Shown here piece after piece: positions 28,401 to 35,278 of a DNA stretch of 64,000 nucleotides. Below the pieces are notes generated by a model. The model worked only from the letters and a program-made list of their open reading frames with translations. It searched no databases and was not told the origin of the DNA. This stretch comes from Laetmonice hystrix (Eukaryota). The stretch's first letter is position 1. Each line of letters starts with the position of its first letter. Location: NCBI GenBank assembly GCA_965235115.1, contig OZ249445.1:10044001-10108000 (forward strand). Reading direction: 5' to 3'. The translations under genes were made by a program, and so were the position numbers.

Positions 28401-28776
28401 ACAACCATTTTCTAAAGGTCTCCTGATGATGTAACTGATCTATCTCTCCTTGAAAGATATTAGCGAGCGCAGCGAGCTGCAAAGCGGCTCGCAAAGTGAG
28501 CTCTATACCCAAGGAGCTGCATACCGTGCATCGATCGGATATGGAAATCCATGGAGGCTTTGGTGGTATTACGGAGCCGGCAAAATTGGAGCAATCTGAT
28601 TGGCTTAAATGGGGTGCCGGCATAAATATGTCATCCTCCAGAGGGCGCTCCGAGCAAGTAGACCGGAAGTGGCGGCCGGTAAACAAGCCATCCACGCTGC
28701 CACGCTGTTTACAGTCGAGTGCACATGTGCGTTTACGGTCCGGTGCACCTTTTCAAAAGGCTTGGTAGCATATATA

Positions 28777-30888
28777 ATGCCACAATGCTCAGCTCTTGGA
28801 TGTACAAATCAAGGAGGCCATAGGTTCCCCACCAGCAAGCCTAAACTAATGAGGCAATGGGTTGTGGCTGTGAGACGAGAGGAGCCAGGGAAAAGGGGTA
28901 AGCTATGGCGCCCTGGACCAGCTGCAAGAGTCTGCTCGGACCACTTTGATGAAAGAGACTACAAAACAATGAACTTTTACGGTAGGTATTTTTCCAGTAA
29001 TGATGGCAGAATAATAATATTGTAGGCCTATAGATGTTCATTGACTCTGTTATATTGTGAAAAGTGGAATGGTATTAATTAATGAAGTACAGTGGCAATG
29101 TCAGTCTCGGTCACTCAACTATCTTTAGGCTTGATCAAGACTGTGGCAATGTTGGCTGTTGAGTGTTGTCTCGGCCTACGACAGACAGGAAAGTTCAAAC
29201 TGTGTTACAAATATTTCAAGTGTGTATTTCCCCTCCCCCCATTCATTTAGGTAACAAACCAGCCTACAAGCAGCTTAAAGCCGATGCAGTTCCTCATATT
29301 TTTCCGTGCTTGGGGAATAGTGCATCACCAAGTAGCAGTGGTAGGGCTATCCGAGCTCAAAGGAAAGACATAAAAGAAAAAGAGAGAGACAGAGAAGGAC
29401 AAGAAGCATGGCATGACATTGGCATGGAGGAGGAGGTATCGACCACACACGACGAGGAACCTAATGGTACAAATAAGTTTTTATTCTTGTTAAATACATG
29501 GAAAAAACATGTTAATGATCAGCCATTGTGACAAGTTTTTCCACTTTCTCACAACTTGGCACATACACCACAGTAAACAACTGATTTGACAAATGCATTT
29601 AATTGTGATGTAAAGTAGATTCAAATTTTAATTACTATTTACTAAATTCTGCCCACACTTTTTATTAACAGAAATGTACAAGAACACAATGATTATAATT
29701 TTACAAGTTGTATTGCTTGATGTAATAACCGTACAATGCTAAATAACTGTCCAGAGTCTTATCCTGTTATTACTGCCTTCCAAACCATCAATTGTATCAC
29801 TACACTCTATATACTCATGAACCAGAAAAATATATTTTCTATGACTTTACCAGATTTTTGTTCAGGATTTCACGCACCTGCAAGAACTACTATTTTTCGC
29901 TGAAACCCCTCATTTCCTTGTTACAGAATCATACGAAGTACAGGAAAGCCATTCTACTTCTGTAGCTGTTCAGACGGATTCCACTTCAGTGCGTCAGTTG
30001 TACAATGCCAAGAGATTTGATGACGACACTATGCATTTCTATACTGGACTAGAAACTTATGAAAAATTTAGAATGGTGTTGGATAGCCTCGGTCGTGCTG
30101 CTCACGTTCTAGTCTACTACTACGGTGTGGAACCGCCCATCTCAGTTGAAGATCAGTTTTTCTTAACACTTATTAAATTAAGAACTCATCCAACAAACAA
30201 GGAGCTGGGAATATTTTTTGGCCTCAATGAAAAGCAAGTGAGCAACGTTTTCATAACCTGGATAAATTTCATGTTTTGTCAGTGGGAAGAAATCGACTGG
30301 TGGCCTTCACGAAAGTTAATACAGTATTATTTCCCTTCAGACTTTCGTTTAAAATTTCCTGCCACAAGAGTTATTGTTGATGGAACTGAGTTTCCTATAA
30401 AGAAACCCAGACAACCCGTTGCACAGCAAGCCACCTTTTCCACATACAAGAACAGAAATACCATGAAAGTTTTAGTTGGTGCAAGTCCAGGTGGTTTGGT
30501 GACCTATGTCTCACCAGCCTATGGTGGGTCAGCTAGTGACCGACAGATAGTGGAACGGTCAAGTCTCCCCCGCATGTGTGACCCTGGGGATGAAATTATG
30601 GCAGACAAAGGCTTCAACGTTGAGGACATGTTCATTCCATACTATGTTGCTATTAATATCCCTACCTTTTTCAAGAAAAAGAACAGGATGTCAAATGAGA
30701 CTGTCATTAAAGACAGGAAAATAGCAAGCAAAAGGGTCCATATTGAGAGGATTATCGGTTTGGCAAAAACATACAAGATACTTCGTGATCCTATGGTGAA
30801 CATGGAATCGTCTCTTGCATCTCGTATTGTAAGAGTTGTTTTTATTTTATGTAATTTTCGCAAGTGTATTGTACCAGAAAATGCCTAA
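28777..30888 (+). CDS. THAP-HTH-DDE (DDE_Tnp_4/Harbinger-type) transposase, 3 exons, ~460 aa
   Basis: join(28777..28981,29251..29466,29927..30888) = 1383 nt with consistent phases (1,1) and GT-AG ends. THAP motifs CSALGC..FP..W..W..VCSDHF..LKADAVPHIF; HTH FFLTLIKLRTHPTNKELGIFFGLNEKQVS; catalytic VIVDGTE / MADKGF / RVHIERIIG. Confidence 0.92.
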
Positions 30889-30992
30889 CTGCAGTTTAGT
30901 TGTGCCTGTCAAAAAGTCAAAAAGTTTTAACATTAACGAAAATTAAGAAATGTCTAAATATATAGGTTGCAGAAAAGAATATTATGGTCTAA

Positions 30993-33900
30993 CTAAAAGT
31001 ACTGATCATAGAACTTGTAAACATGTTTTTGCAGTAGAGCAGGCCTGAAGTAAGTGTGATAAAAGGTGTTAAGCTTGGTGACCATGTCTGTGATGAACTC
31101 CTCATCTCTTGTTATTTTACATACTTTAAAGTCCTTTAAGGTGAAAACACAAAAGTAGCACATTTTTCTACCTGAGCACAAAAGCTGGCCTTGCACTTGA
31201 TAAAAGTACACGTGATTTCTGTCAAGGGTAAGCCCAGAAGTACACTTCTTTAGATATGGCACAGTGACGTGGTCGATTTGCTTGTCCTTGGCAGTGTACG
31301 GACACTTAACCTCGACAATGACTTCAGAATCAATGACTCTGTCAGGTGATGCTGCCAACCACGGAAAGTTTTCTTTTATGTATAGTCCGCATTCTTGTGT
31401 TTTTCCATGCACCTTTTCGAAATACTCCACAGCGACAGACTCGTATGCTTGCCCATAGCTTGTCGCACGACTCCTAAATTCCTTGGGCGATAGCATTTGA
31501 GTCGCGAGCTTTGCCAAATCCCTTCTTACTGTCGATTTTGCAATGCTTCCAAAATTAGAAGACGTGATTCTTTTGGATCTTTCCACCTTCCACAACTTGT
31601 TTCCTGCCTGTCCACGTGTTTTCTGTTCTATTTCTATAGTGTCAGCCTCTGTGATATGTGATATCTGAATAAAAAAATTATTGTGGATAAGAAACATGTA
31701 TAGGCCTATTCGCAACGACCTTCATTAGTAGATCTAAGACAATATATTCAATGGAACAAAATTTCCATATGAATAGGCAAACTTGCTAGTCCTACCTAAT
31801 TTAGATTTCATGCATTAGTGTATGAGTGTAATGTAACAAAATTAATCTACCAGTAGATATAAAGTCATTCTATTATTTCATATCACTTGCTGTAGCCAGT
31901 AAATCAACCTGATCATAATATTAAGCCTATAAGGCGTGTTAAAAAGTACCTTTTCTCTTTTTAAAAAGGCCTCTTCAGACGACATGTCATAGTCATGCAT
32001 AGTGTTGTAAGCATATGGATCCGCAGGCTGGTAGAGTTGCAGCACAGGCATCTTTCCCTCACCCTGAAAATCAATTTTCATACAAGAATCATTCAGGAAA
32101 ACCTTGAAATAATTTTAATGTCTTCTATTGCAGAGTGGCTATATATAGTAAAATATAGTAAAATTCACAGGTCAAGATTCTGATGTATTTGTTACACTAT
32201 TACAATTCATACTATGTACTAATTTTACCTGGAAATTGAGTACTGTGTTTCTGAAATGGTCTGGATAAGCTGGTTGCTGCCTATAATTCTGGGGTCTTGG
32301 GTCATATTCAAACTTCTGGTTGCGCATTTCTTGGATGTGGCATGCTTTCATTGGGGAACCTTTGTAGGGTTTCGTCTGGTGGAAAGTTTGCAATCTCTGA
32401 AATATAATTTATAACAAGGTGAATAAAATGCGTGTCTATGTTGCTTTCCTTTGAGATATTTAGACTCTAAACATAGATCTATATGAAAAGGCTTATTCCA
32501 ACAAAAGAATTTACTGAGAAAAAGGATAATTTGACCAAAATCATGCAAAACAAGTGGGTTACTTTAAAAAAAAATATATTTCATTGTCCAGAGAAGTATA
32601 GGCTAAATTTACCTGTGTACATGTTTGCTCAGTGATTATGTCTCCCTGAGAAGTAAGGCAGTGTATGCCATACAGAACACAGGCCACATGTTTACAGTGT
32701 GCTGCAGGACCCTGACCAGCCGCACACTCACACTGTGCTTCCTGGATCACCTGGTGGTCATCTACAGCCACATCCACCTTATAGGCTACACTCTTTTTCA
32801 TTTCAGCCCATATGCTTCCAGTTAGGTAGAAAATCCCTTTGGCATTGGTTGGTGACATGCGAACAAATCTGAGGTATCTGTAGGAAGAATACAGTGGCAA
32901 TTATTGAATGTCCCCATCTCAACCATGCAAGTATTTTTTACCAGGAGAGTTGATGACCCAACAGGTGTCATTTTCATATATATATGCAAAATTATGTAAG
33001 TAAAGTTTTTATTTTAATTTTGAAATACACAAGACTGAAACTCTTGCCCACAAAGTTGCATTTCACTGAGAAGATATGAGCTTTGAGATAATAAATGACA
33101 TACCTTTGCTTGTATAATTGTTTGATTTTTTCTTCAAACTCCTTGTCCTGGTTCTTAAGGTATTGTAGAATTCTACACATAGGTAAATCAGGCAGTACAG
33201 AACCTGCATGTACATCACTGTAGGTTGATGGCTCAGGCAAGATCATGTCATACTCGTCCTCCATGTCCTGTTCCCTATTTGTCACCTGCATGATGTCAAG
33301 CGACTCAAGCCTGAATATTGAACAAGAAGAATAAAGTGGTACTTTACTAAAAAAAACATGAGGCAGATGCAGAATTTTCAAGGGAGAATCACTAAAGAGA
33401 CGGGGGGGGGGAGCTAGGAAAAAAATTATGTCTACGACTCTCAGCCAGGTAAACCAAGATTCAGTCAATCTATCAGAGTAAAAAATTTTTTTTCAAAGTG
33501 TAGCTAAAAAAAAAGGATATAAGAATCCATTCAGTCAACTGCTGCCTAACACAAAAATAACAAAAGCACCCTTAGTTAAGTTAGGTGTCTCCAGTTTGAG
33601 TTACACTTTTCCATATTTTTTTAATGACACGAAATAGGCCTAAAATGCCTATAATATACATTTCTACATCTGAGTTCAATAGTTCTACTATTTGTATGTT
33701 GGCACTGAATTAACATGATCGTCTAGATCTAGACTTCTTAGCTGTGCCTATTACTAGTAGAAATGCTACAGAAATATGAAAGTTTGAGTGCAACAAAGCT
33801 AAACTTAAGTGCAACACGTGTGACCCCCTGACCCTGACTGAGAGTGAGACAGCAGCAGCAGCATGATGATGCTAATAATTGCCGTTAATTTACTTACCTT

Positions 33901-33998
33901 TCCAAAAGATCCCTTTTCTTGCCAGAACACTTGATTCTTCTTCTTTTTAGCTCTGCTTGTAGCTGTTTCAACGTCCATGATTTGTACTTTGACGACAT
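30993..33998 (-). CDS. SAP - SWIM zinc finger - YqaJ (lambda-exonuclease-like PD-(D/E)xK) protein, 6 exons, ~508 aa
   Basis: complement(join(30993..31664,31950..32063,32229..32396,32613..32877,33104..33310,33898..33998)) = 1527 nt, all GT-AG and phase-consistent. SAP-like WTLKQLQAELKRRRIKCSGKKRDLLERL; SWIM CECAAGQGPAAHCKHV; YqaJ motifs WLAASPDRVI..VEVKCPY and YFYQVQGQL. Confidence 0.9.
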
Positions 33999-35278
33999 AA
34001 TTTCCACGTTGACACGAGTCCTTTGTCTGCCAAGTCACTCACTCACTGGATGCTGCCGGGAGTGAGCGACAATACGTTCGGTACGCCCGCTTGCAGCGCC
34101 GCGGTGCGGCAAAAATGTGCCGGTACCCCATTGCACTGCATCGAAATTCAAATTTCCCAAACACATGGGAATAGATCTACAATTTCAAAACAGATTCCAA
34201 ACATTTAGTGACTTTTCCATTTGATTCTACCTACTATTCACGTCAAATCGCCTGTCGGAAACGTAACGGCCAATCGCTTCTGTTTACAGCCGCTTGACCG
34301 AAGTGAAAATGGTGGAAAACTTAGCCTGCTAGACTGTGGATTTAGAACCCGGTCTGTTGATTTCCACTGTGACGTCACAATATCAGCAGATGCTTTTTCC
34401 AACTGTGACATGACAATATCACCACGGTCGTCATAAGACGACAATAGGCGTTACTAAGTGACCTGTCACTCCCGGTAACTCGATCGATCCCGGCGCCTGA
34501 CTTGGCAGACACCCATTTCAATATCAATGACTATGGAAAGCTGAAACACTGTGCGCGCCCCTGGGTAGCGCCTGAGTCATATTAGTTGAACCTAATTATT
34601 ACGGGAGTTTTCGATATAATAGAACAATTGCAAACATGTGCTGCCACCAGGATGATGTCATAGACCTGTCAACTTTCCTGTCATACTCATTATATGTCAT
34701 ACTCATAGTCCTGTTTTCAGTTACACCAATGTAATGTACGGTCACAGTCACATTATTAAAAAAAAAGCTAACCGCAAACGGCAAAAACCAAAAGAAGAAA
34801 AAACAGACGCATTTTGTCATATATTAACCTCGGTTAACTTTGGCAACATATGCCCACTACCATGCAGTGTCAGTGACATTCTTTGTCCTGAATGTAGTCA
34901 CTAACACTCTCAGTCTCACTAGTCTCAGCCTCGGCTCCGCCTCAGGCCAGCTGGCTGTCACTGGGATTTCATTCATGATTCACTCGTAATTCACGCATCA
35001 ACACTTCACGCATCATCCGTGTGTGGTTCAAAATACACATCTATCCACAAACACACTACACTAATGATATGAAGCAGTATTACATTTGTTTAAGAACGCC
35101 GCAATCAATGGCAATGAATGAGAGACCATACTGAGTGAATGACACGCGGTTCTTGTTGACGGTGTCACTGACATGACATTCGCGGACGGCGAGCGAGGCC
35201 CGAGCCTCATCTCAGCCCACTGTTGATGTCACATTCTGAGCTAATCGAGCCTGATTAAAATGTCTCAGAATCACCTAC

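What the first reader, a model, noticed from the sequence alone, without database searches (positions are those of the whole stretch)
30993..33998. Transposon accessory gene fusing SAP, SWIM and a lambda-exonuclease-like nuclease
The ORF track misses the first exon (33998-33898), which encodes a clear SAP-like DNA-binding helix pair spliced to SWIM and YqaJ domains. Canonical Harbingers use a Myb/SANT partner protein; here the partner is a DNA-binding 5'-3' exonuclease-like protein with intact PD-(D/E)xK residues (SPD...EVK). Inference: it may resect donor-site or target ends to drive homology-directed repair, which would turn cut-and-paste into copy gain, or it may process transposon ends. 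YqaJ in ISL2EU is established; whether the SAP fusion has been described I cannot verify.
Basis: partly seen in the sequence, partly recalled or inferred. Interest (0 to 1): 0.75.

Follow-up and report, generated by a model that had tools for sequence, protein, structure and literature searches.

The report
ISL2EU transposon's SAP-SWIM-exonuclease accessory gene
This is the intact second gene of an ordinary ISL2EU "jumping gene" in an invertebrate genome, and its make-up (a DNA-tethering SAP motif, a SWIM zinc finger and a lambda-exonuclease-type nuclease) is the conserved norm for this transposon family across animals, although no one has yet tested what it does.

Summary
A six-exon, 508-aa gene lies on the minus strand at 33998-30993, with GT-AG at every intron and the frame kept.

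- **SAP:** exon 1 alone passes Pfam's SAP threshold (33 bits).
- **SWIM:** exon 3 carries an invariant CxCx9CxH knuckle and folds as a SWIM domain. The window's sequence gives no Pfam SWIM hit.
- **Nuclease:** exon 6 is a YqaJ/lambda-exonuclease domain with every catalytic motif intact.

No RNA runs were available, so the 33898/33310 splice is supported only by comparison. The same intron, in the same Arg codon and phase, follows the SAP exon in elements of Gigantopelta, Helicoverpa and a Logan contig.

The gene sits tail to tail with a THAP-HTH-DDE_Tnp_4 transposase. Both lie between GGGGTRCCGGCA inverted repeats with an AT duplication in an AATT site, which is a textbook ISL2EU element (28611-34129).

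The SAP-SWIM-YqaJ architecture is not special to this copy. It recurs in arthropods, molluscs, cnidarians and chordates and is auto-annotated in public databases. [quoted passage not shown]

Verdict: a new member of a known kind, of modest interest. The scan also noted this same element separately, as s1-313661.

The parts
28609..28610 (.). Left target-site duplication AT, preceded by A
   Evidence: The rebuilt empty site reads ..TTAAATTGCA.., with A|AT|T as described for ISL2EU in PMC4482050.
28611..28624 (+). Left terminal inverted repeat, GGGGTGCCGGCATA
   Evidence: 12 of 14 bases match the right end. It starts with GG, as reported for the family. A related element, L003, ends in AAT+GAGGTACC on both sides.
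28777..28981 (+). Transposase exon 1 (start of the THAP zinc finger)
   Evidence: Pfam THAP, 40.8 bits. tblastn with the H. zea transposase. Gene model.
29251..29466 (+). Transposase exon 2 (end of THAP with the AVPHIFP motif, then an acidic linker). The donor site is uncertain: 29466 or 29510.
29927..30888 (+). Transposase exon 3 (HTH_Tnp_4 and the DDE_Tnp_4 catalytic domain). The acceptor site is uncertain: 29927 or 29974.
   Evidence: Pfam DDE_Tnp_4 134.7 bits and HTH_Tnp_4 47.1 bits. tblastn: 64% identity to the L003 transposase over 29947-30885, 51% to the H. zea one. With the window's DDE ORF as query, 66% to L003 and 54% to H. zea.
33898..33998 (-). ORF2 exon 1: start codon and SAP domain (aa 1-33, plus two bases of the Arg34 codon)
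   Evidence: Pfam SAP, 33 bits, E 4.5e-8. The intron position is conserved in L001, L002 and L003.
33104..33310 (-). ORF2 exon 2: end of SAP helix 2 (RLESL), an acidic linker and the start of the helical part of the SWIM module
   Evidence: The homologue model has a disordered linker at residues 39-50 and helices at 76-98.
32613..32877 (-). ORF2 exon 3: SWIM-type zinc-finger domain (four strands and a helix). The CxCx9CxH ligands lie at 32732-32688.
   Evidence: Invariant C, C, C, H in 42 sequences. Model pLDDT 94.3. Atlas and ZSWIM8 matches.
32229..32396 (-). ORF2 exon 4: conserved LQTFH / GSPxK / DPRP linker motifs
   Evidence: This region has low confidence in the homologue model.
31950..32063 (-). 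ORF2 exon 5: conserved MPxxQLxxPA and DHxY motifs, a helical lead-in to the nuclease
30993..31664 (-). ORF2 exon 6: YqaJ/lambda-exonuclease domain (Pfam match 31592-31167) with W310, R314, E360, D393, E403, K405 and the YxYQVQGQ motif. The stop codon is at 30995-30993.
   Evidence: Pfam YqaJ, 55.3 bits. PDB sequence matches. Homologue model against 3syy and 1avq, TM 0.70-0.79 by target.
34116..34129 (-). Right terminal inverted repeat, GGGGTACCGGCACA read on the minus strand
34130..34131 (.). Right target-site duplication AT, followed by T

Best explanation
**What it is (shown).** The stretch is ORF2 of a complete, apparently intact autonomous ISL2EU (PIF/Harbinger-like, 'PHIS') DNA transposon at 28611-34129. 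ORF1 on the plus strand is a THAP-HTH-DDE transposase. ORF2 on the minus strand converges on it, with the two stop codons 104 bp apart. ORF2 encodes a 508-aa protein with three modules: an N-terminal SAP helix-extended-helix on its own exon, a SWIM-type CxCx9CxH zinc-finger domain, and a C-terminal lambda-exonuclease/YqaJ PD-(D/E)xK nuclease. This architecture, the convergent two-gene layout and the intron after SAP are all conserved in ISL2EU elements of distant animal phyla.

**How it probably works (inferred).** ORF2 is an active Mg-dependent 5'-to-3' exonuclease acting on double-stranded DNA ends. SAP holds it on DNA or chromatin, and the SWIM module holds it on DNA or on the transposase. 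It acts on the breaks that the transposase makes. My preferred version is that it resects the donor-site break. The break's 2-nt AT overhangs could otherwise simply be re-ligated. Resection would steer repair to homology-directed copying from the sister chromatid and so restore the element, giving a net copy gain.

**Confidence.** About 0.9 for identity and architecture, about 0.6 that nuclease activity matters for transposition, and about 0.3 for the specific resection/homology-directed-repair route. The figure given below is for identity plus 'an active end-processing nuclease serving transposition'.
For: **Element anatomy**
- TIRs, the AT duplication in an AATT site and a GG start match the published ISL2EU definition.
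- The related element L003 ends in AAT+GAGGTACC on both sides.

**Domains**
- SAP, YqaJ, THAP, HTH_Tnp_4 and DDE_Tnp_4 are all above Pfam cut-offs.
- SWIM is supported by the invariant motif and by fold.

**Nuclease**
- Sequence and profile matches to LHK-Exo and lambda exonuclease cover the W..R (lambda's WHKLR), E, D, ExK and QxQ motifs.
- The homologue model superposes on 3syy and 1avq.
- The catalytic D, E and K, and the W and the E of G...E, are invariant or at least 90% conserved in 50-64 sequences from several phyla. This argues that the activity, not just the scaffold, is under selection.

**Conservation of the whole arrangement**
- End-to-end alignment with proteins of Helicoverpa, Eretmocerus, Frankliniella, Gigantopelta and Mytilus.
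- A convergent THAP-DDE gene lies next to the SAP-SWIM-YqaJ gene in L001, L002 and L003.
- The intron position and phase after SAP are identical in all four elements.

**Logic of the inferred role**
- The transposase carries its own THAP DNA-binding domain, so unlike the Harbinger Myb partner, ORF2 is less likely to be needed only for DNA binding. This point is inference.
Against: - No transcript evidence for this copy. The only runs holding it are DNA.
- No experiment on any ISL2EU ORF2 exists in the searchable literature. PMC4482050 says its function is unknown.
- Lambda-type exonucleases usually work with a single-strand annealing partner, and none is encoded here.
- Trimer formation, substrate preference and any contact with the transposase were not testable with these tools.
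- The window's SWIM does not reach Pfam's threshold.
- The full-length structure is of a 38%-identical homologue, not of this protein.
- The 12/14 TIR match alone is not significant (E 0.2). It is convincing only together with its position, the duplication and the L003 termini.
Confidence: 0.6

Rival explanations
1. **Second-strand nuclease of a two-protein transposase, as with Tn7 TnsA and TnsB.** The DDE transposase would cut or transfer only the 3' ends. The PD-(D/E)xK protein would remove or cut the 5' (non-transferred) strands, so that ORF2 is a catalytic subunit of the transpososome itself. SWIM would be the contact to the transposase and SAP the contact to the DNA ends.
For: - ORF2 belongs to the same broad nuclease superfamily as TnsA (established knowledge).
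- Its active-site residues are conserved across phyla.
- ORF1 and ORF2 are strictly coupled in a convergent layout in four elements from distant hosts.
- Lambda-exonuclease-like nucleases have been recruited independently by another transposon superfamily, KolobokE (PMC9587614). YqaJ also sits next to or fused with Mutator-like transposases.
Against: - The closest structures are processive end-dependent exonucleases (LHK-Exo and lambda Exo), not site-specific endonucleases.
- The Arg aligned with lambda's WHKLR (lambda's 5'-phosphate-binding Arg, from my own knowledge) is kept, which suggests that a free 5' end is needed.
- Harbinger and PIF relatives transpose without such a nuclease.
Confidence: 0.2
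2. **Mainly non-catalytic helper, the functional analogue of the Harbinger Myb-like partner.** SAP and SWIM would bring the transposase into the nucleus or to the transposon ends or chromatin. The nuclease domain would be a scaffold or serve a secondary purpose.
For: - The literature calls ORF2 a 'DNA-binding protein'.
- SAP is above threshold and conserved.
- The SWIM ligands are invariant.
- In Harbinger the partner protein has exactly this helper role (PMC4122938, and established knowledge of Harbinger3_DR).
Against: - The ISL2EU transposase already has THAP and HTH DNA-binding domains.
- Near-invariance of the catalytic D, E and K, and of the W and Q motifs, over very long divergence would not be expected of a mere scaffold.
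Confidence: 0.12
3. **Dead or silenced relic.** This copy would be open by chance of youth but not expressed or functional, and the exon-1 join would be a coincidence of sequence.
For: - No RNA run holds the stretch.
- Other copies are degraded: L004 carries a frameshifted fragment.
Against: - Six exons with consensus splice sites and an unbroken 508-codon frame.
- An intact three-exon transposase frame.
- Intact TIRs and duplication.
- A SAP exon above the Pfam cut-off, at an intron position conserved across phyla.
- Absence of RNA runs for this organism is not evidence of silence.
Confidence: 0.08

Closest known systems
ISL2EU group of the PIF/Harbinger-like (PHIS) superfamily of DNA transposons (Repbase; Han et al. 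2014 PMC4122938; Han et al. 2015 PMC4482050)
   Same: - Two genes: a THAP-HTH-DDE transposase and a YqaJ-domain protein.
- AT duplication in an A|AT|T target.
- TIRs that start with GG.
- An animal host.
All of these were found here.
   Different: Nothing essential. The published descriptions I could read do not mention the SAP and SWIM modules or the separate SAP exon. Here both are shown to be conserved features of the family.
Lambda exonuclease / LHK-Exo (PDB 1avq, 3sm4, 3syy); YqaJ of the Bacillus skin prophage
   Same: - The same fold and active site: W..R (lambda's WHKLR), E, D, ExK, QxQ.
- This predicts a Mg-dependent 5'-3' exonuclease acting on double-stranded ends.
   Different: - The phage enzymes are single-domain proteins of about 200-230 aa that pair with an annealing protein (Red beta, YqaK).
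- This protein has a 285-aa N-terminal SAP-SWIM extension and no annealing partner, and it is encoded with a DDE transposase.
Myb/SANT-like partner protein of canonical PIF/Harbinger elements
   Same: It is the second gene of a related two-gene transposon and is presumed to bind DNA.
   Different: The fold is unrelated and the Myb partner has no enzymatic domain. The ISL2EU partner is a nuclease.
KolobokE transposons, which encode a lambda-exonuclease-like PD-(D/E)xK nuclease (Kojima and Bao 2022, PMC9587614)
   Same: Another eukaryotic DDE transposon lineage that carries a lambda-exonuclease-like nuclease.
   Different: - A different transposase superfamily.
- The nuclease is encoded downstream of the transposase domain rather than as a separate convergent gene.
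- I did not compare the sequences.
Tn7 TnsA/TnsB heteromeric transposase
   Same: A PD-(D/E)xK nuclease working beside a DDE transposase. This is a functional analogy only, drawn from established knowledge.
   Different: TnsA is a restriction-enzyme-like endonuclease, not a lambda-Exo-type exonuclease. No homology was tested or claimed.

Membership tests
ISL2EU transposon (PHIS superfamily) | Transposase with THAP, HTH and IS5/Harbinger-type DDE domains | tested here: met
   Pfam THAP 40.8 bits, HTH_Tnp_4 47.1 bits, DDE_Tnp_4 134.7 bits. An open three-exon frame of about 460 aa.
ISL2EU transposon (PHIS superfamily) | Second ORF encoding a YqaJ-domain protein | tested here: met
   Pfam YqaJ, 55.3 bits. 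The gene is convergent with the transposase inside the same TIRs.
ISL2EU transposon (PHIS superfamily) | AT target-site duplication within A|AT|T, and TIRs starting with GG | tested here: met
   AT at 28609-10 and 34130-31. The empty site reads AATT. TIR GGGGTRCCGGCA, 12 of 14 matching. Criteria from PMC4482050.
SAP domain (PF02037) | Profile match above the gathering score, and a helix-extended-helix of about 35 aa | tested here: met
   33 bits against 23.9 on exon 1 alone. The aligned homologue P0139 scores 50.3 bits and models as helices 7-16 and 25-37.
SWIM zinc finger (PF04434) | Profile match above the gathering score | tested here: not met
   No hit for the window's exon 3 at E<=1. Homologues reach 17.4-17.6 bits against 19.6. 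4 of 64 match at E<=0.01.
SWIM zinc finger (PF04434) | CxCxnCxH zinc signature on a strands-plus-helix fold | tested here: met
   C49, C51, C61 and H63 of exon 3 are invariant in 42 sequences. Model pLDDT 94.3, four strands and a helix. TM 0.70 to an Atlas cluster that is 100% PF04434, and 0.67 to bacterial SWIM+SNF2_assoc. The best solved match is ZSWIM8 145-214, Z 5.9, which is modest.
YqaJ / lambda exonuclease family (PF09588; PD-(D/E)xK) | Profile match and conserved active-site residues (E, D, ExK), plus the Arg aligned with lambda's WHKLR | tested here: met
   55.3 bits against 22. SPD, EVK, G...E, W...R and QVQGQ are aligned to 3syy and lambda Exo.
YqaJ / lambda exonuclease family (PF09588; PD-(D/E)xK) | Lambda-Exo fold | tested here: met
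   Shown for the 38%-identical homologue P0139: Foldseek E 1.4e-9 to 3syy (TM by target 0.77) and 9.5e-9 to lambda Exo 3sm4_B. The window's own domain was not folded.
YqaJ / lambda exonuclease family (PF09588; PD-(D/E)xK) | Toroidal trimer and processive 5'-3' exonuclease activity | not testable with these tools
   Needs a multimer prediction or biochemistry.

The most novel reading that the evidence does not exclude
ISL2EU elements would carry their own end-resection enzyme. The SAP/SWIM-tethered lambda-type exonuclease would resect the transposase-made donor break, or strip the non-transferred strand. That would force homology-directed restoration of the donor copy and make a nominally cut-and-paste eukaryotic transposon replicative in effect. 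Alternatively, it would act as the second catalytic subunit of a eukaryotic two-protein transposase, as TnsA does in Tn7. Either reading would be a new mechanistic class among eukaryotic DDE transposons.
Probability: 0.3. Interest if true: 0.7.

Novelty: new member of a known kind. Interest (0 to 1): 0.33.

Why it matters
- **State of knowledge.** The role of the ISL2EU second gene has been an open point since the family was described. [quoted passage not shown]
- **What this adds.** The full conserved architecture is SAP on its own first exon (routinely missed by gene callers), a SWIM module and a fully equipped lambda-type exonuclease. This gives a concrete protein to test.
- **A usable starting point.** This copy appears intact, with both frames open and its TIRs and duplication in place. 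It would be a reasonable starting sequence for a transposition assay.
- **If the nuclease biases break repair or takes part in strand cleavage.** That would explain how a cut-and-paste family gains copies, and it could interest makers of transposon tools.
- **Limits.** The element itself is an ordinary member of a known family.

Tried and rejected
- **Transcript test of the splice.** No RNA test was possible.
- **Pfam SWIM on the window's exon 3.** No hit. The call had to rest on the motif, the homologues and the fold.
- **Foldseek of the exon-3 model against the PDB.** Nothing at E<=0.001. Only the exhaustive aligner and the Atlas found SWIM relatives.
- **Termini from a second copy.** L004 holds only a degraded fragment, 78-95% identical over 30829-33062. 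It has no SAP exon, no transposase and no ends. L003 gave the corroborating termini instead.
- **Idea that SWIM came with a MULE/Mutator transposase.** I rejected this. The Mutator-YqaJ proteins P0079 and P0187 lack the CxCxnCxH motif and share only the nuclease part.
- **Founding paper.** Bao et al. 2009 (PMC2727372) is not held, so I cannot exclude that SAP or SWIM was mentioned there or in Repbase entries.
- **Literature searches.** YqaJ with 'SAP domain', and ISL2EU with SAP or SWIM, gave nothing relevant.
- **Other copies in the window.** There is only this one.
- **Full-length window protein.** I did not submit the spliced 508-aa protein to the family, homology or structure tools, because it has no reference form. 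Exons were searched separately, and full-length homologues were used instead.
Full report
**1. What is in the sequence**

On the minus strand between 33998 and 30993 I could join six exons. They are 33998-33898, 33310-33104, 32877-32613, 32396-32229, 32063-31950 and 31664-30993.
- Every intron begins with GT and ends with a pyrimidine-rich tract and AG.
- The joined sequence is 1527 nt with a single terminal stop, giving a 508-aa product.
- In the genome, exon 1 runs into a stop two codons past its donor site. It is therefore only a 34-codon ORF and falls below ordinary ORF listings.

**2. Domains**

- **SAP.** Exon 1 alone matches Pfam SAP at 33 bits (E 4.5e-8, cut-off 23.9).
- **Nuclease, sequence level.** Exon 6 matches YqaJ at 55.3 bits and Viral_alk_exo at 28.2 bits. 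It also matches the solved exonucleases LHK-Exo (3syy) and lambda exonuclease (1avq, 3sm4).
- **Nuclease, motif level.** A profile of 50 full-length relatives aligns to these structures over all the motifs:
  - W..R, aligned with lambda's WHKLR. This Arg is lambda's 5'-phosphate-binding Arg28, from my own knowledge of the numbering.
  - ITSS
  - G...E
  - SPD
  - E-V-K-C-P
  - Y-x-Y-Q-V-Q-G-Q
  
In the window protein these are W310, R314, E360, D393, E403 and K405.
- **SWIM, the weakest call.** Pfam gives no SWIM hit on exon 3 even at E<=1. Relatives score just under the cut-off (17.4-17.6 against 19.6 bits), and 4 of 64 match at E<=0.01.
- **SWIM, supporting evidence.**
  - The CxCx9CxH signature is invariant in all 42 aligned sequences.
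  - The AlphaFold model of the window's exon 3 (pLDDT 94.3; four strands and a helix) superposes at TM 0.70 on an ESM-Atlas cluster whose members are all PF04434. It superposes at 0.67 on bacterial SWIM+SNF2_assoc proteins.
  - Its best match among 48,161 solved chains is ZSWIM8 residues 145-214 (Z 5.9, rmsd 2.3 over 67 residues, 22% identity). That Z is modest.
  - UniProt names the Mytilus homologue 'SWIM-type domain-containing protein'.
  
  I accept it as a SWIM-type zinc finger that lies at the edge of the Pfam model.

**3. The splice joining SAP to the rest**

No transcript test was possible. The comparative evidence is strong.
- **End-to-end alignment.** The 508-aa product aligns end to end with independently predicted proteins:
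  - 505 aa in Helicoverpa zea (XP_047039840)
  - 505 aa in the snail Gigantopelta aegis (XP_041374757)
  - 545 aa in Eretmocerus hayati
  - 516 aa in Frankliniella occidentalis
  - 554 aa in an unnamed NCBI record
  
  With Mytilus galloprovincialis (412 aa) it aligns in two blocks. The alignment is collinear across the exon 1/2 junction: ...DLLE|RLESL here, ...ELIERLESY in Mytilus.
- **Same intron in three other elements**. In each fetched locus the SAP motif sits on its own first exon, and the intron splits the same Arg codon after its second base (phase 2):

| Element | Donor | Acceptor |
|---|---|---|
| Window | GGAAAG\|GTAAGT | ..CAG\|GCTTGA |
| Gigantopelta (L001) | GGAAAG\|GTTAGT | ..CAG\|ACTTGA |
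| Helicoverpa (L002) | CGAAAG\|GTATGG | ..CAG\|ATTGGA |
| Logan contig (L003) | AAACAG\|GTAAGA | ..CAG\|ATTGGA |

- **A parallel miss.** In L003 the automatic ORF caller missed the SAP exon (162-266) just as in this window.

**4. The surroundings: a complete ISL2EU element**

- **Transposase.** On the plus strand, 28777-30888 encodes a transposase in three open pieces: THAP, then HTH_Tnp_4, then DDE_Tnp_4. They can be joined into an unbroken frame of about 460 aa. The second intron's exact borders are uncertain.
- **Layout.** The two genes converge, and their stop codons are 104 bp apart.
- **Ends.** The element is bounded by GGGGTGCCGGCATA (28611-28624) and its inverted partner GGGGTACCGGCACA (34129-34116), with 12 of 14 bases matching. 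It is flanked by AT on both sides, and removing it leaves AATT.
- **How strong the TIR evidence is.** The match alone is weak statistically (E 0.2 in the flank comparison). But three features are exactly those published for ISL2EU (PMC4482050): TIRs starting with GG, an AT duplication, and an A|AT|T target. The related element L003 also ends on both sides with AAT+GAGGTACC.
- **Conserved layout.** The same convergent pairing of a THAP-DDE gene with the SAP-SWIM-YqaJ gene is seen in Helicoverpa, Gigantopelta and L003.
- **Agreement with another note.** An independent first-stage note (s1-313661) gave the same borders.

**5. How widespread the architecture is**

- An exhaustive search with the nuclease exon found 8593 relatives, 207 of them at E<=1e-30. 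Many of the best 150 are 400-550 aa long with the nuclease at the C-terminus.
- Of 64 such long proteins, 63 have YqaJ, 7 have a Pfam SAP hit and 4 a Pfam SWIM hit. A separate count of the CxCxnCxH motif over all fetched proteins of at least 380 aa, also 64 in number, found it in 56.
- ESM-Atlas clusters that match the SWIM model combine YqaJ, SAP and SWIM in Arthropoda, Cnidaria and Mollusca. SAP is annotated in 23-64% of their members. A further YqaJ cluster is mostly Chordata.
- Because the SAP exon is short and separated by an intron, these shares are probably underestimates (inference, from the L003 and window cases).
- So the fusion is the family norm, not a feature of this copy.

**6. 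Structure of the whole protein (homologue)**

The Helicoverpa protein is 38% identical to the window's. It models with mean pLDDT 88.5 as follows:
- SAP, helices 7-16 and 25-37
- a disordered linker, residues 39-50
- a compact module of two helices, four strands and the SWIM helix, residues 76-174
- a low-confidence conserved linker
- a helical lead-in
- the nuclease

Foldseek places the nuclease on LHK-Exo and lambda exonuclease (E 1e-9 to 1e-7, TM by target 0.66-0.79). ZSWIM8 also appears in the list, at E 6e-3.

**7. Mechanism**

What is shown is a complete lambda-type active site, kept over very long divergence and attached to two conserved nucleic-acid or protein-binding modules. It is always partnered with a THAP-DDE transposase. 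What follows is inference.
The enzyme resects the double-strand break left at the donor site. That break would carry self-complementary 2-nt AT overhangs and could be re-ligated precisely. Resection would instead channel repair into homology-directed copying from the sister chromatid, restoring the element and giving a net gain.
- **Rival 1.** A TnsA-like role in removing the non-transferred strand inside the transpososome.
- **Rival 2.** A mainly non-catalytic helper role like that of the Harbinger Myb partner. This fits poorly with the conserved active site and with the transposase having its own THAP and HTH domains.
- **Rival 3.** This particular copy is silent.

No experiment on any ISL2EU ORF2 was found, and PMC4482050 states that the function is unknown.

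**8. Comparison with what is known, and novelty**

- The element meets every defining feature of ISL2EU that I could test.
- YqaJ in ISL2EU is established. Lambda-exonuclease-like nucleases also occur in KolobokE transposons.
- I found no paper that names SAP or SWIM in the ISL2EU partner. The founding paper was not available.
- Public databases already carry automatic SAP, SWIM and YqaJ annotations for these proteins.
- The fair summary is a new, apparently intact member of a known family, plus a modest descriptive gain: the conserved three-module architecture and the conserved, easily missed SAP exon.

**9. Verdict**

Interest is modest.

Noticed in passing
L003:1-4737 (Logan contig of run ERR10921498): The contig is a whole related ISL2EU element. 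It begins and ends with the same inverted 11-mer, AAT+GAGGTACC, so assembly stopped exactly at the element's ends. It has a SAP exon at 162-266 that the ORF caller missed, an otherwise intron-free ORF2, and a convergent THAP-DDE gene.
   Followed up: partly
Proteins P0079 (840 aa), P0187 (644 aa) and P0175 (1450 aa): Close relatives of this nuclease domain (37% identity or less) occur in predicted proteins together with a Mutator-like transposase domain (PF20700). In one case the partners are PHD and Ulp1-protease domains. None has the SWIM motif. They may be real fusions or merged gene models.
   Followed up: partly
L004:6500-8750 (ENA assembly ERZ26222911, contig ctg1020030_41x_l): A degraded fragment, 78-95% identical to window 30829-33062 (ORF2 exons and introns). 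Its nuclease exon is split by a frameshift. It has no SAP exon or transposase, and it lies near two DUF7869 genes.
   Followed up: partly
window:29984-30218 and 31331-31506: DNA contigs of the same sample include variants with 16-17 differences over 176-232 bases, besides near-identical ones. Contigs also break or diverge at 30908-30917, between the two genes. This suggests further diverged copies or deletion derivatives of the family in that genome. Copy number could not be estimated.
   Followed up: no
window:30889-30992: The stop codons of the two convergent genes are only 104 bp apart. The first AATAAA-like signal for ORF2 lies inside the transposase coding region (about 30845), so the 3' ends of the two transcripts probably overlap antisense.
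   Followed up: no
Same genome, another piece (scan note s1-319952): The scan's notes list a 'TTA-flanked Harbinger-like transposon with convergent THAP and SAP genes' inside an MCM4 intron. It may be a relative of this element with a different target duplication. I did not examine it.
   Followed up: no
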